A stretch of DNA of 47,928 bases from Octopus bimaculoides (taxonomy: Eukaryota): contig NC_069003.1 in the NCBI RefSeq assembly GCF_001194135.2, positions 23,102,149 to 23,150,076 of the forward strand, read 5' to 3'. Below are positions 6,016 to 47,881 of the stretch, piece by piece. A program made the translations under genes and the position numbers. The notes beneath the pieces are model-generated. The model saw only the letters and a program-made list of their open reading frames with translations. It was not told where the DNA came from and made no database searches. Position 1 is the stretch's first letter; each line of letters starts with the position of its first letter.

Positions 6016-6199
6016 ATGAAAAATATGCATTTAGTTGGAGAAAAATATGGAAACCTAGCGGTAATAGTTAATAATTCACAAAGACAAGGGGAAGTAATTT
6101 CAAGAAATTATGAATTAATCTCTTTAAATGAATTTACATGCTCGGGATAAAAATCGCTCTTTGCCTGCTTTATTTAGACCTCATTAGCTTTGTCTAATA

Positions 6200-6645
6200 T
6201 ATGGAAGTCTTTTTTGATGAGTTCACAAAGGTTTGTTACAAAGACAAGAAGTGTCGACAATGCTACTACTTGTTCAGCAATCAATTCAGGCAGGCTCACA
6301 TGATTTGGGGTATAAGGCCTTGCTCCTGATCTGCTGCAGGTGAAGCTATTTGACGCAACGGAGAAGTGACGTTTCTCAAGTGCTCTTCCATATTTTCTCT
6401 GTTGTTTCTCTTCAGTGGCTGGAGTTACGGGCTTCAGCGATTGGTACCATTCATGGCGCTGCAGGCCCAGGTGTCTGGGGGAGATGCCACAATTCTTCAT
6501 ATGTCTCTTCAGCACATCCCTGTATCATAACCTGTGGCCACAACAGCTTCACGTACCCTGACGCAATTCAGCATGAAAAAAAAAAAAACCCTGCTTTTGG
6601 GAGCCTGCCGCCCTCCATCCTGTTAACATGTCCCGCCCCAAAACC
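6200..6645 (-). mobile_element. RTE-clade LINE 3' fragment
   Basis: The minus strand reads VNRMEGGRLPKA.F..ELRQGT..RL.YRDVLKRHMKNCGISPDTW...FTC, typical of the RTE ORF C-terminus; contains stops and frameshifts. Confidence 0.75.
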
Positions 6646-26350: not shown

Positions 26351-26605
26351 ACTGCGGCCATGCTGGAGCACTGCTCTAAAGGGTTTTAGTCGACGATTTC
26401 GACCCCGGGACTTATTGTCAGTAAGCCTAGTACTTATTCTATCGGTCAGTTTTGTCGAACCGTTAAGTTACGGGGACATAAACATGCCAACATCGGTTGT
26501 CAAGCGATAGTGGGAGGGCATCCACAAACACAAAGTCACGCACACATAAATATACACACATATACATATATACGACGATCTTCTTTCAGTTTCCGTCTAC
26601 CAAAT
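26351..26605 (-). mobile_element. SINE family B 3' half
   Basis: ACTGCGGCCATGCTGGAGCAC..TTTCAGTTTCCGTCTACCAAAT. Confidence 0.85.
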
Positions 26606-26881
26606 TATTAAATTTATTTCAAGATTTCTTGCCAATAGAGAAAGAATAGGTTTCTAACCTAGATTCAAGGCTCCTTCATTGGAATTTCAACATCAACAAT
26701 TGTATGTATGTATATATGTATGTATGTATGTATGTATGATAAAACAAGCGAATGAATTTTCGGGAGTTGCTACAATTGTTTCTTTAGAAGCTTTTATTAT
26801 GATGTAAGCATAATACAATTATTCAGGTTATGCAATACACTAATCAACTTCCAAGCTCGCCAGGCAACGTCTCAAAACGGA

Positions 26882-26960
26882 GTGACGTAACGACTTGTTG
26901 AGTGATTCATTTATTGTGTGGTCGGGAATTGATGGATCACTCAACAAATCATTACTTCAT
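26882..26960 (+). ncRNA. Candidate pri-miRNA-like hairpin
   Basis: 34-position stem with 4 mismatches and 3 G-U pairs, and an 11-nt loop, in apparently unique sequence; strand assumed from the putative host gene. Confidence 0.45.
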
Positions 26961-27435
26961 CGATACTTTCTGCTCTGATAGCGGATTACTTCACTTTTGT
27001 CTGCCTCTGCAGGATTCTCACTAGCTAATCAGGAGCGTGCTTCACGTTGAGATGCCTAGATTCTTTACAGATCTTTGTAACTAAGATATATATGTGTGAG
27101 TGTGTGTATGTGTGAGTGTGTGTGTATATAGATAGATAAACAGATAGATATACATACACACATACACATATATATGCAGTTAGATATAGATAGATAGGTG
27201 TGGAGTTTAATTATATGATCTCCATTATATAACTGGTAATCATTCTTTGTTTATGAAACGCGTATTAGATGATGTAATTAAATATTGTATAAATAAACCG
27301 TCCTGTATTGTTTACACCAATACACACGGACTCATTCAAACTCTCACTCAGTTACGTACGTATGAATATTTACATACATATGCAGTTATAAATAAATAGA
27401 CTCATGATATTAACATATTGATATTTATATAGATA

Positions 27436-28170
27436 CAGGGTGGGTGAAAAGTAAGCAGGCATTAAAAATTTGTCATAAAATCCATTTTCTTTTTACAAAT
27501 TTATTGAAACAAATGAGACATGTTCTTTATTACACGGGGAAATGAAAGTAAATCTTCATATTTCAACGTAAGCACCGGTGGTGTCAACCAGTTTCCTCAA
27601 ACTGCCAGGGATGGAATGAACAACCCTCTGAAAGACGTCATCTGGGATATCAATGAGAACCCTCTGAATCTGTGTCTCCAGGCCCTCCTTTGTGTGAGAT
27701 TTTGTCTTGTACACCACCTCTTTTGTGTAACCCCACAGGTAAAAGTCACATCGAGTGATATCTGGACTTCTTGTAGTTCTGGACTTCTGGACTTCTGCGG
27801 TTACAGTCTTCAAATTTTAGCTCCTGCACGTAATGGGGTTTCCACGGACGAAAATTCAATTCTTTATGTAACACTGTACGTATTGTGAGTCTTGTTAGTC
27901 CACTTTCACGAGTTGCTTGACGTGTTGATTTTTGTGGGCTGCGATTAAACATTTCCTGCTCTATTGCCACGTTCTCCGCCGATCGGGATGTGGTTGGACG
28001 GCCACTTCTTTTTGCATCGTTCATAGAGCCCAGTGTCCTCAGCTTTGCATGACAACCTTTTATTGTCTCCGGATGTAGTGTTGCATGCTTACCTTTCCAT
28101 GCACGCCACCATCTCTGAACCAAAACAATGGAATTCCATGCTTCATAGCGTGCTGTTATCTTAGCTCACT
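27436..28170 (-). mobile_element. Tc1/mariner-superfamily element, internally deleted
   Basis: TA plus TIR CAGGGTGGGTGAAAAGT at 27436; N-terminal HTH (KRSGRPTTSRS..RSPQKSTRQ) joined almost directly to the C-terminal RSPDITRCDFYLWG, so most of the DDD core is missing. Confidence 0.85.
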
Positions 28171-32544: not shown

Positions 32545-35453
32545 ACAATTCAAATAAGTTTTATTGGATTTGTATCATAGACATGGCATCCTTTATTTGA
32601 CCCATTAATTGATAGCAATGGTCGTTGATCTGTTTGTAACAGAAAGCTTCTACCAAGTAGAAACCTGTGAATTTTTTTTTTACAGTAAAGATAAAGCTTC
32701 TTTTTCTATCTGACTGTATTTTTTTCTCTGCCGCTGTCAGCGAACGCGAAACATGAATCACTGGTTTCATACTTCCATCTTTATACTTGTGTAGCAAAAC
32801 TACTCCTATTCCGCATTCCGAAGCACCAGACGCTACAACAATGATTCAAGAGACAAATCTGCGATTAGAATTCTTTTTATTTCTTCAAACACGTTTTGGC
32901 ATTTAACCGACCAATTCCACTTTACTTCCCTTTAATAAGTCATTCAATGGAACTCTTAATTTGTGTATGGTAGGAATGTAGTTTTGGTAGTAGTTTGCCA
33001 GCCCACGAATCGATTATAATGTTGGTATATTTGTCGGAGCAGGAATATTATTTATTGCGTCTGCCCTCAACGAGTCAAGCCGTCTACCATTTTTATCAAC
33101 TATTTGCCCTAAGTACTTAATTTGAGGCAAAAAGAATTCTCATTTTTCTTCACTCAAAGTGAACCTGTACTCTTTAATTTTCTTGAACACAACTTTTATA
33201 TGCTCCACATGCTGCTCATGCGAATTACTCTTAATCAATATATCGTTCAAATAAGGGAGTGCAAATTCACAATCAGATAACATAGCGTCCATGATTTGCT
33301 GAAATATTGCTAGTGCAACCTTTAATCCAAAAGGTAACCGGGTATATCTTTACAGTCCTCTATATGTATTTATTGTCAGATCCTTTGAGCATTTGTTATT
33401 TACTTCAATTTGTAAATAAGTGTCAGATAGATCCAATTTCGAGAAAAGTTTTCCACCATTTAATTTTGCAAAAATGTCCTCAGGGTCCGGGAGTGGATGG
33501 TGGCAGGTCTTTAAGCAGGCGTTCAATCCTGTAGAGAAATTGGCACACAGCCTAATCTTACTATTTTTCTTTTTAATGCACACCGCAGGCACCGCCCACT
33601 TAGAATAATCCACCTTTTTGATGATTCCACTCTTTTCCAGTCTGTACAACTCTTCATTTACGATTTCAATTGCCATGATCGGTACTTTTCTGTTAGATTT
33701 AAATATAGCCACAGTGTTTTCACTTACTTGAAAGTAAGGCTTCAGTCTTTTTACATAGACCTAACTCCTCCAATAGTACTCGAGGAAACAACCCTTTCAA
33801 TTTTCTTTTCAATTGCTCAGACGATTTATTTTTAACGGGACAACAATTTATGTTTCTGCAGTAGAGACTTATGGGGAGGTACCGTAAGTCAAATAACTCC
33901 AACCAATCTGTACCAAACAGATTGATTGTATTCTCCTCAATGAATATTTTTGGTTCGCGTGTTGCTCCTCGAAATGTGACGTCTGTACACATTTCACCCA
34001 TAAAATGTAATTTATCGCCCGTTACGCCAGGCGCAATTTTCGCTGTTTTACGTAAGTAACCTCGGTTTTCCAATTTTTCTCCATGTATCCTCATTTATGA
34101 TTGAAATATCACTACCCGTACCCAACTGTAGTTTAATATTTGCACCATTTATTTTTACGTCTACGAATTTTTCTTGTTTTTGTGTCGCATTCACTTCCTG
34201 CTGAAAACACCTCAGTACGTTTTGCGTTCGACCCTCGTAATTTTGTCCTGCTCTTGTGAGCAAGTTTCTGACAAATACAGCATTTTCTGTTTTTAAACGG
34301 ACACTCTTTTCTGAAGTGTAGGCCTCCACATCTGCAACATGGATTGGTGGCTGGCACTCTTTTTTTCGTTCACTTTCCGGGTCGACACATCTGAATTTTT
34401 GCGGAATCTTTCTCTTGAATTTTTTCACGTCGTCATTCAACTTTACCATTGACATTCTTCTGCAATGGTCTGTAGGATTAAGTCTTGGTTCGCTTGCTCC
34501 ATTCTTGAGAGTTTTTGCCCGAATTTCTCTATCTTCGGTTGCTGTAAGGCCTTGTACGAAGATAAGGGATTTAAACATATCCGGAGTGAGTTCCTGAAGT
34601 TTAAATTTTTTACACATACGGTTGACTACTCCAGCGTATGTAATAAAGTTATCATCGTCATTTTTTGTTAAGTTCCAACACTCCATTCAAGTGTTAAATA
34701 ATGAACTTTTGTCACAAAAGATCTTTGATAGTAATTCAATAGTTTCTTGGAAACAAATCTCACTCGACTTTTTGGGCAATATAAAGTTACAGCAGCGTTC
34801 ATGCTCGGCCGGAGCTACCTTGCGCAGCAATAGCCTCACCTTCTCCTCATCCGACCATGACTTACAAACTTTATTAAAAATTTCCTCGTACCTTCTATAG
34901 TACGTAGGAAGTGTAATACCCTCCTCCGGATTATAAGTGAATTCAGAAATCGAGTTCGTCACGCCGTCTGGCGTAATCGAACTTACCGAATTTTCTGACT
35001 TCCTTGACTGTAACTCAATTAACAGTTGTTGTTGTTGTTGTTGTAGTAATATTTGCTTCTGCAACTCCTGTAAATGTTCCTGTTGCTTCTCTTGAAGCTG
35101 TATTACTGTGGCTAATAGGTTCTCCATAATTTAACCAATTTGTATGACGCATAAATTGTCAAATAACTTAGGTTAGCTTCGAAAAATCCTTATCGCTAGA
35201 TGTTATATCCTTACGTCTCCAATATCGTAATACGGTTGATATTGTCGGCGATAGATAAAGAATATACTGTAACAGTGTTATAACAATACAAAATAGAATC
35301 AGCGGCAGTAACAAATACGTAACGAACCAACAATCAATATTTCCTGGACTTCGAAAACCAAATTATGAATTGCCGACTACGTCAACCCGCTACTGTTCAT
35401 GTGTAGTTACCACGTCTGTTCTCGTCAGAAGGTGTCGTACTCTCGCCACAACA
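32545..35453 (-). mobile_element. Ty3/Gypsy (Mag-like) LTR retrotransposon remnant: 5' LTR, gag, protease, RT, partial RNase H
   Basis: Gag ITLPTYYRRYEEIF..KVRLLLRK; paired knuckles CCRCGGLHFRKEC..CCICQKLAH; protease LQLGTGSDISI (catalytic D lost); RT WAVPAV..IRLCANF..FSKLDLSDTYLQ; RNase H PVIHVSRSLTAAEK. Frameshifted; no integrase or 3' LTR seen. Confidence 0.92.
35191..35453 (-). repeat. 5' LTR of the Gypsy remnant (263 bp)
   Basis: The minus strand runs TGTTGTGG...GGATATAACA, followed by a degenerate PBS TCTAGCGATAAGG (compare TGGCGACGAGG) just upstream of gag. Confidence 0.65.
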
Positions 35454-38726: not shown

Positions 38727-38890
38727 CGACCGGCTTCTTTCAGTTTCCGCCTACCAAATCCACTCGCAAGGCTTTGGTCGGCCCGAGGCTATAGTTGAAG
38801 ACACTTGCCCAAGGTGCCACGCAGTGGGAATGAACCCGGAACCATGTGGTTGGTAAGCAAGCTACTTACCACACAGCCACTCCTACGCCT
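38727..38890 (-). mobile_element. SINE family B 5' half
   Basis: Reverse complement of head and body. Confidence 0.88.
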
Positions 38891-38892
38891 AA

Positions 38893-39271
38893 GCGCAGGC
38901 GTAGCTGTGTGATAATAAGTTTCTTTCCCAACTATATGGTTCTGGGTTCAATCCCGCTGCATGGCACCTTGGGTAACCCGTTTGAGTGGATTTGGTAGAC
39001 GGGAAGTGAAAGCGGCCCATCATATATATACAAATGTGTATGAGTGTGTGTGTGTCTTTGTGTCTGTGTTAGTCCCCACCAATGCATGACAACCGTTGTT
39101 GGTTTGTTCACGTCTCTGTAGTATCGGTTCGGCAGTAAAGAAACCGATGCAATAAGCGCCAGGCTTTAAAAAAATAAGCCCTGGGGTCAATTCATTCGAC
39201 TAAATGTTCTTCAAGGCGGCGCTCCAGCGTGGCCGCAGTCTAATTGACTGAAACAAATAATAGATAAAAGA
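38893..39271 (+). mobile_element. SINE family B, near full length
   Basis: GCGCAGGCGTAGCTGTGTG head through GACTGAAACAAATAA; about 40-bp internal deletion. Confidence 0.88.
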
Positions 39272-40035: not shown

Positions 40036-40158
40036 ACTGTTCACTGACAAAACTTCGTGCTGCATTACTTTTGTAAAGTTTTGTCAGTGAACAGGTTGCG
40101 GTTTGAAATCGAAGAAAATATTTTGACACAAATGAAATTTTGATGTTGAAGTGAAACT

Positions 40159-42394: not shown

Positions 42395-43400
42395 GCCCCT
42401 TAGCCTATAGGCTTTGCCTGAGTAGGAGTTGCTCGAACTCATTTAGCCTTCGGCTACGGAAAGTTTTCATCTGCGGTCTCTTGTCAACCATAGCTACTTG
42501 AGCTGGTTTTAGCTGCCATGCCTTTCTTCGTGGCGGCTTTCTTCAGTCGTTTGTATTCGTTTGTATACCAGTCAGACGGCACTGGCATCGGCCCCTCTCG
42601 AATGGTGTTTTTTCCTGCAACGGCTACGATTTCACTCGTAGACTATAGCCTACACCACCAGATATTTAAAGCATCTCAGCAGTGATTCCTGATGGACCGG
42701 GGGATTTCTCTGTCTTCATACCGTTAATTGCTTTATCTACCAAGGCACTGTCAATTCAGATAGCTAATCCCTCTGTTGGGTCGATGTTTGGCAAACTCTC
42801 TTTCTCCCATTCATTCTCTTAATTCAGTAACCTTTCATAGTGGCGTCACCAAGTCTCTCTCTTTGCAGCATCATTAAATGCAAGTGAGCCATCATCCATG
42901 CGGACACATTTCTCTCCTATGACATCACAATTTTCTCTCACACACTGCCTTGTAATTCGAAACACTTCAAGTCTCTGGTCCTCACGACACAGAACATTGG
43001 TAAATTTCTTCTTATCTGCTTCCCTTCTGGCTAAGTAAACATGTCTCCTCGCTTCCCTTCTAGCTATCTGATACGGTTCCTTGCTACTACTACACTTCTA
43101 GTCCTTCCATGCCTGTTTCTTTTCCCTACTGGCCCTGTAAACTACATTGTTCCACCACCATGTCATCTTAGTACGAGAGGGGACTTTGCACCAGCTACAG
43201 ATCTGGTTAGTAGTTTTCAATAGGTTGTCCCGTAGGAACCTCCAGTCGTTCTCCATATTATGTGATGTTACATCCTCTTCTTTTTTGTCAAAAACTTCAA
43301 GTAATATGTCTCTAAATCTTTGTCCATTCAGAAGATCTTTAAGCTTTCGGACCCTTCTTTTCCACACTGGTCGTCTTTTGGGCAGCCATTTAGTCCTAAG
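42395..43400 (-). mobile_element. RTE-X-like LINE fragment (region between endonuclease and RT, plus possible 3' piece)
   Basis: TWWWNNVV.RA.REKKQAWK, EKCVRMDDGSLAF, KAINGMKTEKSPGPSGITAEMLK on the minus strand. Confidence 0.8.
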
Positions 43401-43490
43401 GATTTCGTAATGAGATAAAAAAACCAAGGGTGTGTATAATATATTATACACAGCCTTGGTTTTTTTTTTTATTTCATTACGAAATCCTTA
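43397..43490. repeat. 94-bp near-perfect palindrome bounded by TA
   Basis: TAAGGATTTCGTAATGAGATAAAAAAACCAAGGGTGTGTATAAT mirrored by ATTATACACAGCCTTGGTTTTTTTTTTTATTTCATTACGAAATCCTTA. Confidence 0.92.
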
Positions 43491-46071: not shown

Positions 46072-46190
46072 ATTTCCCGTTGCTCCAGTCCCCTCAGCTG
46101 GTAGAAATGAATAATCCTGCGATGGACCGGCGCCCCGTTCATGAAGGAATACATACGCCAGGGAAACTGGTCAAACCGGCCCTATGCTCC
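46072..46190 (+). mobile_element. SINE internal fragment
   Basis: GTTGCTCCAGTCCCCTCAGCTGGTAG is shared with the SINEs at 1100-1435 and 3383-3727. Confidence 0.55.
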
Positions 46191-46234
46191 TTACGGAGTT
46201 AAGTGGACTAACCAATACATGTTAAATGGGAAAA

Positions 46235-46735
46235 GTAGACAAAAAATACGGTTGTTCCGTAAAGCTTGTGTGAGATGGGTGCCTGGAGAGCTTACCGAGG
46301 CGCATAAGTGTAATCATCTGTCAACGCTTATTTAACCGCTACAACGACGAAGCTCACTTTGAGCCAGAATCCAAAAGGTAGAGCATGGTGTGGAAACACT
46401 CGGAATCGCCAGCGAAAACGAAATTCAAGACTAAACCTTCAGCAGATAAAAGTGGTGCTAACTGTATTGGGGGACGTAAAGGGGATTGTACGGGAATATT
46501 ACTACGAAAGAGGGTCTACAGTCACCAGTGTAGGCTACAGAGAAATCTGGCCAACAAACAGAAACCGGCAATTTTTGCATCAAACACCGCAGCCCGTTGT
46601 CAAAGCAAGTGTTACTCTTGCATGACAATACAAATCCACATATGGCCGCCCACACCATTGAAGCCATTGAAAAATTGGATTTCAAGTTGCTGGAACATGC
46701 GGCATTCAGTCCAGATCTCATTCCTTTCGGTCAAC
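46235..46735 (+). mobile_element. Mariner (DD34D-type) transposase fragment, decayed
   Basis: RKACVRWVPGELT, HFEPESKR.SMVWKH, LLLHDNTNPH, LEHAAFSPDLIP (compare HPPYSPDLAP). Confidence 0.88.
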
Positions 46736-47439: not shown

Positions 47440-47464
<25 letters not shown>

Positions 47465-47472
<8 letters not shown>

Positions 47473-47682
47473 TTGTGTGTCTGTTTGTCTCCCTAGCATT
47501 GCTTGACAACCGATGCTGGTGTGTTTATGTCCCCGTCACTTAGCAGTTTGGCAAAGCAATTGATAGAATAAGTACCAGGCTTACAAAGAATAAGTCCTGG
47601 GGTCGATTTGCTCGACTAAAAGGCGGTGCTCCAGCATGGCCGGGTGTCAAAAATGACTGATACAAGTAAAAGAGTAAAAGAG
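47465..47682 (+). mobile_element. SINE family B 3' half
   Basis: GCTTGACAACCGATGCTGGTGTG..GGCGGTGCTCCAGCATGGCC..AGTAAAAGA. Confidence 0.85.
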
Positions 47683-47881
47683 ATAGATAAATAAATAGAG
47701 AGATAGGTAGATAGATACTTAATTAAATAGACAGATTTGCATACACCCACATTCTATATACATGTGCGTACACGAATATGGAAATTTAACACTTTCCGTC
47801 TATTCTTTCAACCTCTCTTTACTGTGTCTGTCTCAACTATTCTTTTTTACTACATACTTACATACATATATGCATACACAC

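What the first reader, a model, noticed from the sequence alone, without database searches (positions are those of the whole stretch)
26882..26960. Pri-miRNA-shaped hairpin in unique intronic sequence
Seen: the arms GACTTGTTGAGTGATTCATTTATT and AATTGATGGATCACTCAACAAATC close an 11-nt loop. Pairing extends through a lower stem (GTGACGTAA/TTACTTCAT) to 34 positions with 4 mismatches. A CNNC (CTGC) lies about 18 nt past a plausible 3' cut at about 26952. No TIR/TSD or second copy was seen in this window. Established: Microprocessor substrates have about 35-bp imperfect stems with loops of 10 nt or more, and coleoid cephalopods have many lineage-specific miRNAs. I do not recognise either arm as a known family. 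Inference: a candidate novel intronic miRNA.
Basis: partly seen in the sequence, partly recalled or inferred. Interest (0 to 1): 0.7.

Follow-up and report, generated by a model that had tools for sequence, protein, structure and literature searches.

The report
Orphan inverted repeat, unproven miRNA
A 79-base hairpin-forming inverted repeat really exists in repeat-rich non-coding DNA of an Octopus-type genome, but nothing available here shows it is a microRNA gene, and it is most likely an ordinary by-product of local DNA duplication.

Summary
Bases 26882-26915 and 26927-26960 pair over 34 positions: 27 Watson-Crick pairs, 3 G.U pairs and four 1x1 mismatches, around an 11-nt loop. MFE is -33.4 kcal/mol (z = -4.1). 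No comparable repeat appeared in 160 random sequences of the same size, so it is not a chance match.

The miRNA reading is untested and unlikely, about 4%.
- Both strands fold about equally well (-33.4 against -31.9).
- The six arm differences give no strand-specific compensation.
- Rfam has no match. Eighteen plausible seed complements are absent from the held O. vulgaris miRNA seed tables.
- Of three sequence motifs checked, apical UGU fits, basal UG is absent and CNNC is borderline.
- "Intronic" is unverified, because no host exon is in the window.
- The same window holds at least two other non-random inverted repeats and about ten non-microsatellite hairpins with MFE of -30 or lower. A published base rate is 18 miRNAs from more than 6,000 suitable hairpins.

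No second copy, target-site duplication or link to the window's mariner remnants was found, so a MITE origin is unsupported but not excluded.

Best reading: a partly decayed local inverted duplication with no shown function. Small-RNA read mapping and whole-genome BLAST in Octopus genomes would decide.

The parts
26882..26915 (+). 5' arm of the inverted repeat (lower stem 26882-26893, upper stem 26894-26915)
   Evidence: Pairs with 26927-26960 in the MFE folds. At the DNA level the inverted repeat is 27/33 complementary.
26916..26926 (+). 11-nt spacer or apical loop, GTGTGGTCGGG. UGU at 26915-26917 sits where an apical UGU motif would lie.
26927..26960 (+). 3' arm of the inverted repeat
   Evidence: Its core is the only other match to the arm 17-mer in the window.
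26970..26973 (+). CTGC (CNNC-type tetramer), 18-20 nt past the inferred 3' cut. This is at or just beyond the usual 16-18 nt position.
   Evidence: Read directly. My estimate is that such a motif occurs by chance in about 10% of cases.
26745..27085 (.). 341-bp single-copy block that contains the hairpin
   Evidence: Self-BLAST finds no other copy in the window. There is no hit in 36 kb of O. bimaculoides and O. sinensis DNA, where the SINE control hits many times.
26700..26744 (.). (TGTA)n microsatellite bounding the block on the left
27086..27200 (.). (TG)n/(TAGA)n/(TACA)n microsatellite bounding the block on the right

Best explanation
This is an orphan short inverted duplication (a quasi-palindrome): two 33-34-nt arms separated by 11 nt. 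It lies in neutrally evolving, transposon- and microsatellite-rich non-coding DNA of an Octopus-type genome.

Inferred origin: a single local DNA event made the arms complementary. A replication template switch, which copies the opposite strand for a few tens of bases, is the likeliest such event. Inferred history: the arms have since drifted apart by about 18% (6 of 33 positions).

Shown: any transcript through it, on either strand, would fold into a pri-miRNA-shaped hairpin. Nothing indicates that the RNA structure is selected or processed. The most likely current function is none; it is raw material of the kind from which young miRNAs occasionally arise.
For: - The inverted repeat is far beyond chance, with 0 hits in 160 random sequences. 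A mutational mechanism, not composition, made it.
- It is single-copy in the window. It is absent from 36 kb of other Octopus DNA in which the SINE control hits repeatedly.
- It has no TSD and no similarity to the ends of the mariner remnants in the window.
- Both strands fold about equally well: -33.4 against -31.9 kcal/mol, with z of -4.1 and -5.3. That is expected of a DNA-level palindrome.
- The six arm differences are 4 transitions and 2 transversions. They give 2 G.U plus 2 C.A on the + strand and the mirror image on the - strand. No strand shows compensation.
- The same 45 kb holds other non-random inverted repeats: a 94-nt near-perfect palindrome at 43397-43490 and perfect 19-bp arms at 40037-40094. 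Such events therefore recur here.
- In primates, template switching produced more than 6,000 miRNA-suitable hairpins, of which only 18 are miRNA genes (PMC10710096).
Against: - No outgroup sequence was available, so the event itself (an ancestral state without the repeat) is not shown.
- A template switch cannot be separated from a decayed palindromic MITE on this evidence.
- The geometry is unusually close to an ideal Microprocessor substrate: a 34-35-bp stem, an 11-nt loop and UGU at the loop start.
- Lack of function cannot be shown without expression data.
Confidence: 0.65

Rival explanations
1. It is a remnant of a palindromic miniature transposon (a MITE or foldback element). The two arms would be the terminal inverted repeats, with almost no internal sequence, as in the 80-bp human MADE1 element derived from a mariner.
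For: - The architecture of two ~33-nt arms plus an 11-nt spacer (79 bp in all) matches MADE1-type elements (my own knowledge).
- The window is rich in DNA transposons, with two mariner remnants at ~27450-28165(-) and ~46111-46730(+).
- The arm divergence of 18% is similar to the age of other repeats here.
Against: - There is no second copy in the window. There is none in 36 kb of O. bimaculoides and O. sinensis DNA either.
- No TA, 3-bp or 8-bp duplication flanks the repeat.
- The arms are no more similar to the mariner ends than shuffled arms are.
- The sample of about 80 kb can exclude only very abundant families.
Confidence: 0.25
2. It is a genuine, young, Octopus-lineage-specific miRNA gene, whatever its mutational origin. 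A host transcript would be cut by Drosha near 26893-26895 and 26950-26952, and then by Dicer. The products would be roughly CUUGUUGAGUGAUUCAUUUAUU (5p) and UUGAUGGAUCACUCAACAAAUC (3p).
For: - The stem is 34-35 bp with an 11-nt loop, and the hairpin persists in a 341-nt fold.
- The 11-bp-from-base and 22-bp-from-loop rules agree on the cut site.
- UGU lies at the 5' end of the loop, and CNNC lies 18-20 nt downstream. The motif definitions are from PMC6298569.
- On the pre-miRNA segment the + strand folds better than the - strand, -24.2 against -17.6 kcal/mol.
- Octopus has many lineage-specific miRNAs (PMC9699675).
Against: - There is no Rfam match. The best is mir-95 on the opposite strand at 18.8 bits against a gathering score of 67.5, E = 0.58.
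- None of 18 plausible seed complements occurs among about 2,900 O. vulgaris miRNA target-site rows.
- The arm sequences are absent from the full text of the paper library.
- The basal UG is absent and CNNC is off the optimum.
- There is no strand-specific compensation, and no exon or transcript evidence.
- About 10 non-microsatellite hairpins with MFE of -30 or lower occur per 45 kb, against about 164 miRNA genes per genome.
Confidence: 0.04
3. It is a chance match arising from base composition or a microsatellite artefact.
For: The region is flanked by microsatellites, and most of the best-folding hairpins in the window are microsatellite-based.
Against: - The arms are not low-complexity; the two most common dinucleotides make up only 0.21-0.31 of the sequence.
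- None of 160 random sequences gave an inverted repeat of this grade.
Confidence: 0.01

Closest known systems
Canonical animal pri-miRNA hairpin (Microprocessor substrate)
   Same: It has a ~35-bp imperfect stem, a loop of at least 10 nt, UGU at the apical junction and a downstream CNNC-type tetramer.
   Different: - There is no evidence of transcription, processing or conservation.
- The basal UG is absent and CNNC is 18-20 nt rather than 16-18 nt from the cut.
- The antisense strand folds almost as well.
- There is no family or seed match.
Template-switch-generated hairpins (Monttinen et al. 2023, PMC10710096)
   Same: It is a short, adjacent inverted duplication that creates a whole hairpin. 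It is non-random and single-copy, and it lies in non-coding DNA.
   Different: The generating event cannot be reconstructed without outgroup sequence. The arms are already 18% diverged, so this is not a recent event.
MADE1 / miR-548 type palindromic MITEs
   Same: It is a ~80-bp element made almost entirely of two inverted arms. It folds into a miRNA-like hairpin, and mariner remnants lie nearby.
   Different: There is no TA duplication and no other copy in about 80 kb of Octopus DNA. The arms have no similarity to the local mariner ends.
Octopus lineage-specific miRNA families (Zolotarov et al. 2022, PMC9699675; MirGeneDB)
   Same: The host lineage is the same (genus Octopus or close to it), and the precursor shape is the same.
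   Different: No plausible seed is shared with the O. vulgaris miRNAs in the held parts of Data S2 and S3. The precursor sequences themselves were not available for comparison.

Membership tests
Canonical animal miRNA gene | Imperfect stem of about 35 bp with an unstructured apical loop of about 10 nt or more | tested here: met
   34 stem positions, 30 of them paired, with an 11-nt loop.
Canonical animal miRNA gene | Discrete ~22-nt reads from both arms with 2-nt 3' overhangs and homogeneous 5' ends | not testable with these tools
   No small-RNA read data are accessible.
Canonical animal miRNA gene | Primary-sequence motifs: basal UG, apical UGU(G), downstream CNNC | tested here: inconclusive
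   UGU is present at 26915-26917. There is no UG at -14/-13 (26880-26881 is GA). CTGC lies at +18 to +20 (motif definitions from PMC6298569). The motifs were defined in mammals.
Canonical animal miRNA gene | Lies in a transcribed region (intron or non-coding transcript) on the folding strand | not testable with these tools
   No host exon is in the window; the only protein-like ORFs are transposon-derived. No annotation is available.
Canonical animal miRNA gene | Hairpin conserved in a second species (the criterion used for Octopus by PMC9699675) | not testable with these tools
   No searchable cephalopod genome is available. Attempts to fetch orthologous contigs through exact ORF look-ups all failed.
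Known miRNA family (Rfam 15 / annotated O. vulgaris miRNAs) | Sequence and structure match to a family model, or a shared seed | tested here: not met
   - No Rfam hit reaches a gathering score.
- The best sub-threshold hit has E = 0.58.
- All 18 seed-complement 7-mers are absent from the miRNA seed rows of Data S2 and S3. Those files are truncated as held.
MITE / foldback transposon | Target-site duplication flanking the terminal inverted repeats | tested here: not met
   The flanks ...AACGGAG | TCGATAC... share no 2-, 3- or 8-bp direct repeat.
MITE / foldback transposon | Multiple dispersed copies in the genome | tested here: inconclusive
   There is no second copy in the 44.6-kb window or in 36 kb of O. 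bimaculoides and O. sinensis loci, while the SINE control hits many times. The sample is too small to exclude families of fewer than about 30,000 copies.
MITE / foldback transposon | Terminal repeats related to those of an autonomous element | tested here: not met
   The arms score no better against the ends of the two mariner remnants than shuffled arms do.
Local inverted duplication / template-switch product | Adjacent inverted arms with a short spacer, beyond chance, single-copy | tested here: met
Local inverted duplication / template-switch product | Outgroup or ancestral sequence lacking the inverted copy | not testable with these tools
   No orthologous sequence could be obtained.

The most novel reading that the evidence does not exclude
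The hairpin is a young, Octopus-lineage-specific intronic miRNA that was born from a local inverted duplication. It is not yet in MirGeneDB because it is species-restricted or weakly expressed.
Probability: 0.04. Interest if true: 0.3.

Novelty: new member of a known kind. Interest (0 to 1): 0.12.

Why it matters
As it stands, this is an ordinary instance of a common genomic feature: a short inverted repeat that can fold like a miRNA precursor. It matters mainly as a caution. In this genome, shape alone has very low predictive value for miRNA genes.

If small-RNA data showed processing, it would add one more lineage-specific miRNA to the roughly 90 novel families already described in Octopus. 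It would also be an example of miRNA birth from a local palindrome. That would be incremental rather than surprising.

Tried and rejected
1. Rfam, whole window at gathering thresholds and the region at E <= 10: only chance-level miRNA-model hits.
2. Full-text search of the paper library for the arm sequences: none found.
3. Zolotarov 2022 supplements: the precursor sequences are not held, and neither the arms nor the seeds are found.
4. Fetching orthologous contigs through exact look-ups of ORFs in and near the hairpin, and of ten transposon ORFs: none are on record.
5. A both-arms pattern scan of JGI metagenomes: three unrelated hits that share only the 12-mer core. One lies in non-hairpin sequence that looks coding. 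The other two are perfect palindromes with no other similarity.
6. A 38-aa frame across the hairpin searched against 1.84 billion protein representatives: 0 hits. This is a weak test of copy number.
7. A Gag-like ORF search for organism identity: no hits. The RT fragment then gave Octopus hits.
8. ENA contigs from ERZ21867824 (L006-L009): these carry related RT genes but not the Octopus SINE, so they are not Octopus DNA and are of no use for copy counting.
9. Mirtron reading: GT at 26882 and a pyrimidine-rich stretch plus AG ending at 26981 could be read as a weak tailed mirtron. The splice-site matches are poor (GGA|GUGACG) and no flanking exons exist, so this was rejected as coincidence.
10. 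Hairpin as part of the adjacent mariner: the transposase reading frame ends near 27530, and the hairpin lies about 570 bp beyond that, past a microsatellite. Rejected.

Full report
**Observation.** The quoted sequence is present at 26882-26960.

Folded as RNA, the + strand of 26870-26975 gives a single hairpin of -33.4 kcal/mol (z = -4.09; none of 200 dinucleotide shuffles folds as well). Pair by pair:
- 26882-26915 faces 26927-26960 over 34 positions.
- There are 27 Watson-Crick pairs and 3 G.U pairs.
- There are four symmetric 1x1 mismatches: C.U 26886/26956, C.A 26891/26951, C.A 26894/26948 and U.U 26912/26930.
- The loop is 11 nt (26916-26926).

The hairpin survives when the whole 341-nt block is folded. 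CTGC lies at 26970-26973. The description is therefore accurate.

**Is it more than chance?** At the DNA level the arms 26883-26915 and 26927-26959 are 27/33 complementary with an 11-nt spacer. Scanning the real window for ungapped repeats of that grade (spacer 3-20) finds only this one and two (TA)n tracts. None appeared in 100 first-order or 60 third-order Markov random sequences of the same length. My analytic estimate is about 2e-5 per window. A mutational process or selection made this repeat; base composition did not.

**Surroundings.** The window is a draft eukaryotic assembly with eight N gaps. It is about 37% G+C excluding Ns (0.345 of all bases) and is dense in microsatellites and transposons.
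- The hairpin sits in a 341-bp single-copy block (26745-27085), bounded by (TGTA)n on the left and (TG)n/(TAGA)n on the right.
- Upstream lies a SINE-like repeat at 26351-26605, with at least ten diverged copies in the window.
- Downstream lies an internally deleted mariner on the minus strand. Its reading frame ends near 27530.
- The hairpin is not part of either element. Its arms are no more similar to the mariner ends than shuffled arms are.
- No host exon was recognisable anywhere in the window. The only protein-like reading frames are transposon-derived. 'Intronic' is therefore unverified.

**Organism.** A reverse-transcriptase fragment at 33350-33712(-) has its best named relatives in Octopus bimaculoides (77%) and O. 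sinensis (62%). At the DNA level the Gypsy-like element 33168-35157 is 84% identical to an O. bimaculoides locus. SINE copies are up to 93% identical to copies in an O. sinensis locus.

**Tests of the miRNA reading.**

The shape fits. Measuring 22 bp down from the loop or 11 bp up from the base both place the 5' cut near 26893-26895 and the 3' cut near 26950-26952.

Of the sequence motifs listed in PMC6298569:
- UGU lies at the start of the loop, which fits.
- The basal UG is absent.
- CNNC is 18-20 nt from the cut, which is borderline.
- The mismatched GHG motif was not assessed.

These motifs are short and frequent, and they were defined in mammals.

The remaining tests were neutral or negative:
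- Rfam 15 gives nothing at gathering thresholds in the whole window. Around the hairpin it gives only chance-level hits. The best is mir-95 on the opposite strand, 18.8 bits against a threshold of 67.5, E = 0.58.
- The arm sequences occur in no paper text.
- The held supplements of the Octopus miRNA study contain no precursor sequences. They do list seed-complement 8-mers for O. vulgaris miRNAs in about 2,900 target rows.
- None of 18 plausible seed complements from either arm on either strand occurs in a miRNA row.
- The antisense strand folds almost as well: -31.9 kcal/mol, z = -5.3.
- The six differences between the arms are 4 transitions and 2 transversions. On the + strand they yield two G.U pairs and two C.A mismatches. 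On the - strand they yield the exact mirror image. This is the pattern expected from neutral decay of a DNA palindrome, with no strand-specific compensation.

**Base rate.**
- In this one window about ten non-microsatellite 90-nt segments fold into single hairpins of -30 kcal/mol or better. The candidate ranks about sixteenth overall.
- Two further inverted repeats, each also very unlikely by chance on my estimate, are present. One is a 94-nt near-perfect palindrome at 43397-43490; the other has perfect 19-bp arms at 40037-40094.
- Octopus has 164 confidently annotated miRNA genes (PMC9699675).
- In primates, more than 6,000 miRNA-suitable hairpins created by template switching yielded 18 miRNA genes (PMC10710096).
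- Allowing for the good geometry, I put the probability of a processed miRNA at about 0.04.

**Tests of the MITE reading.**
- There is no second copy in the window, even at 3 mismatches over the 17-nt core.
- There is no hit in 36 kb of O. bimaculoides and O. sinensis DNA, where the SINE control hits many times.
- There is no TSD of 2, 3 or 8 bp.
- There is no relation to the local mariner ends.

This argues against an abundant family. It cannot exclude a family of low or moderate copy number, and the 79-bp two-arm architecture does resemble MADE1-type elements. I give this reading 0.25.

**Best explanation.** This is a single-copy local inverted duplication, most simply a replication template switch. 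It has since diverged by about 18% between its arms and lies in neutrally evolving non-coding DNA.
- Shown: the repeat is real, non-random, single-copy within the sample, foldable on both strands, and without a family match.
- Inferred: the generating mechanism, the neutrality and the absence of processing.

**What failed.**
- All attempts to obtain orthologous or paralogous sequence through exact ORF look-ups failed.
- A both-arm scan of metagenomes gave only unrelated hits.
- A translated frame across the hairpin had no relative among 1.84 billion protein representatives.
- ENA contigs from ERZ21867824 (L006-L009) proved not to be Octopus DNA.

**Verdict.** The feature is an ordinary member of a known kind and of low interest, unless small-RNA data show otherwise.

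Noticed in passing
window 43397-43490: A 94-nt near-perfect palindrome. The outer 27-nt arms and the inner 25-nt arms are each 96% complementary, and the inner arms have no spacer between them. It sits at the edge of a LINE-like ORF (43098-43487, minus strand). It folds at -48 kcal/mol, far better than the finding.
   Followed up: partly
window 40037-40094: A perfect 19-bp inverted repeat (CTGTTCACTGACAAAACTT / AAGTTTTGTCAGTGAACAG) with a 20-nt spacer, directly after a (TG)n tract. On my estimate it is also very unlikely by chance.
   Followed up: partly
window 26351-26605, 38740-39240, 14261-14622, 16065-16293, 47442-47685 and others: An abundant SINE-like repeat with at least ten copies at 70-75% mutual identity. 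Copies are up to 93% identical to copies in an O. sinensis locus (L005). At 38846-38935 a stable hairpin (-48 kcal/mol) lies next to one copy, 38740-38891; its upstream arm may be an inverted second copy (not checked). ARAGORN finds no intact tRNA.
   Followed up: partly
window ~27450-28165 (minus) and ~46111-46730 (plus): Two decayed mariner-type transposase remnants. The first is internally deleted: the N-terminal helix-turn-helix part is joined to the C-terminal end in another frame.
   Followed up: partly
window 33168-35157 (minus): Gag-pol fragments of a Gypsy/K02A2.6-like LTR retrotransposon, 84% identical over 2 kb to a copy in O. bimaculoides chromosome CM046616.1 (L004).
   Followed up: partly
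window 11762-13473 (minus), 6174-6524 (minus), 43098-43487 (minus): Fragments of LINE-type reverse transcriptase and associated ORFs. No non-transposon exon was seen anywhere in the window.
   Followed up: no
L006-L009 (ENA assembly ERZ21867824): Long contigs (100-536 kb) filed as a metagenome assembly. They carry Gypsy-type RT genes related to the window's but lack the Octopus SINE, so they are probably DNA of another animal host within a metagenome.
   Followed up: no
window 26951-26959 and 26985-26993: The last 9 nt of the 3' arm (ATTACTTCA) recur exactly 34 nt downstream. This may be a trace of the local rearrangement that made the repeat, or it may be chance.
   Followed up: no
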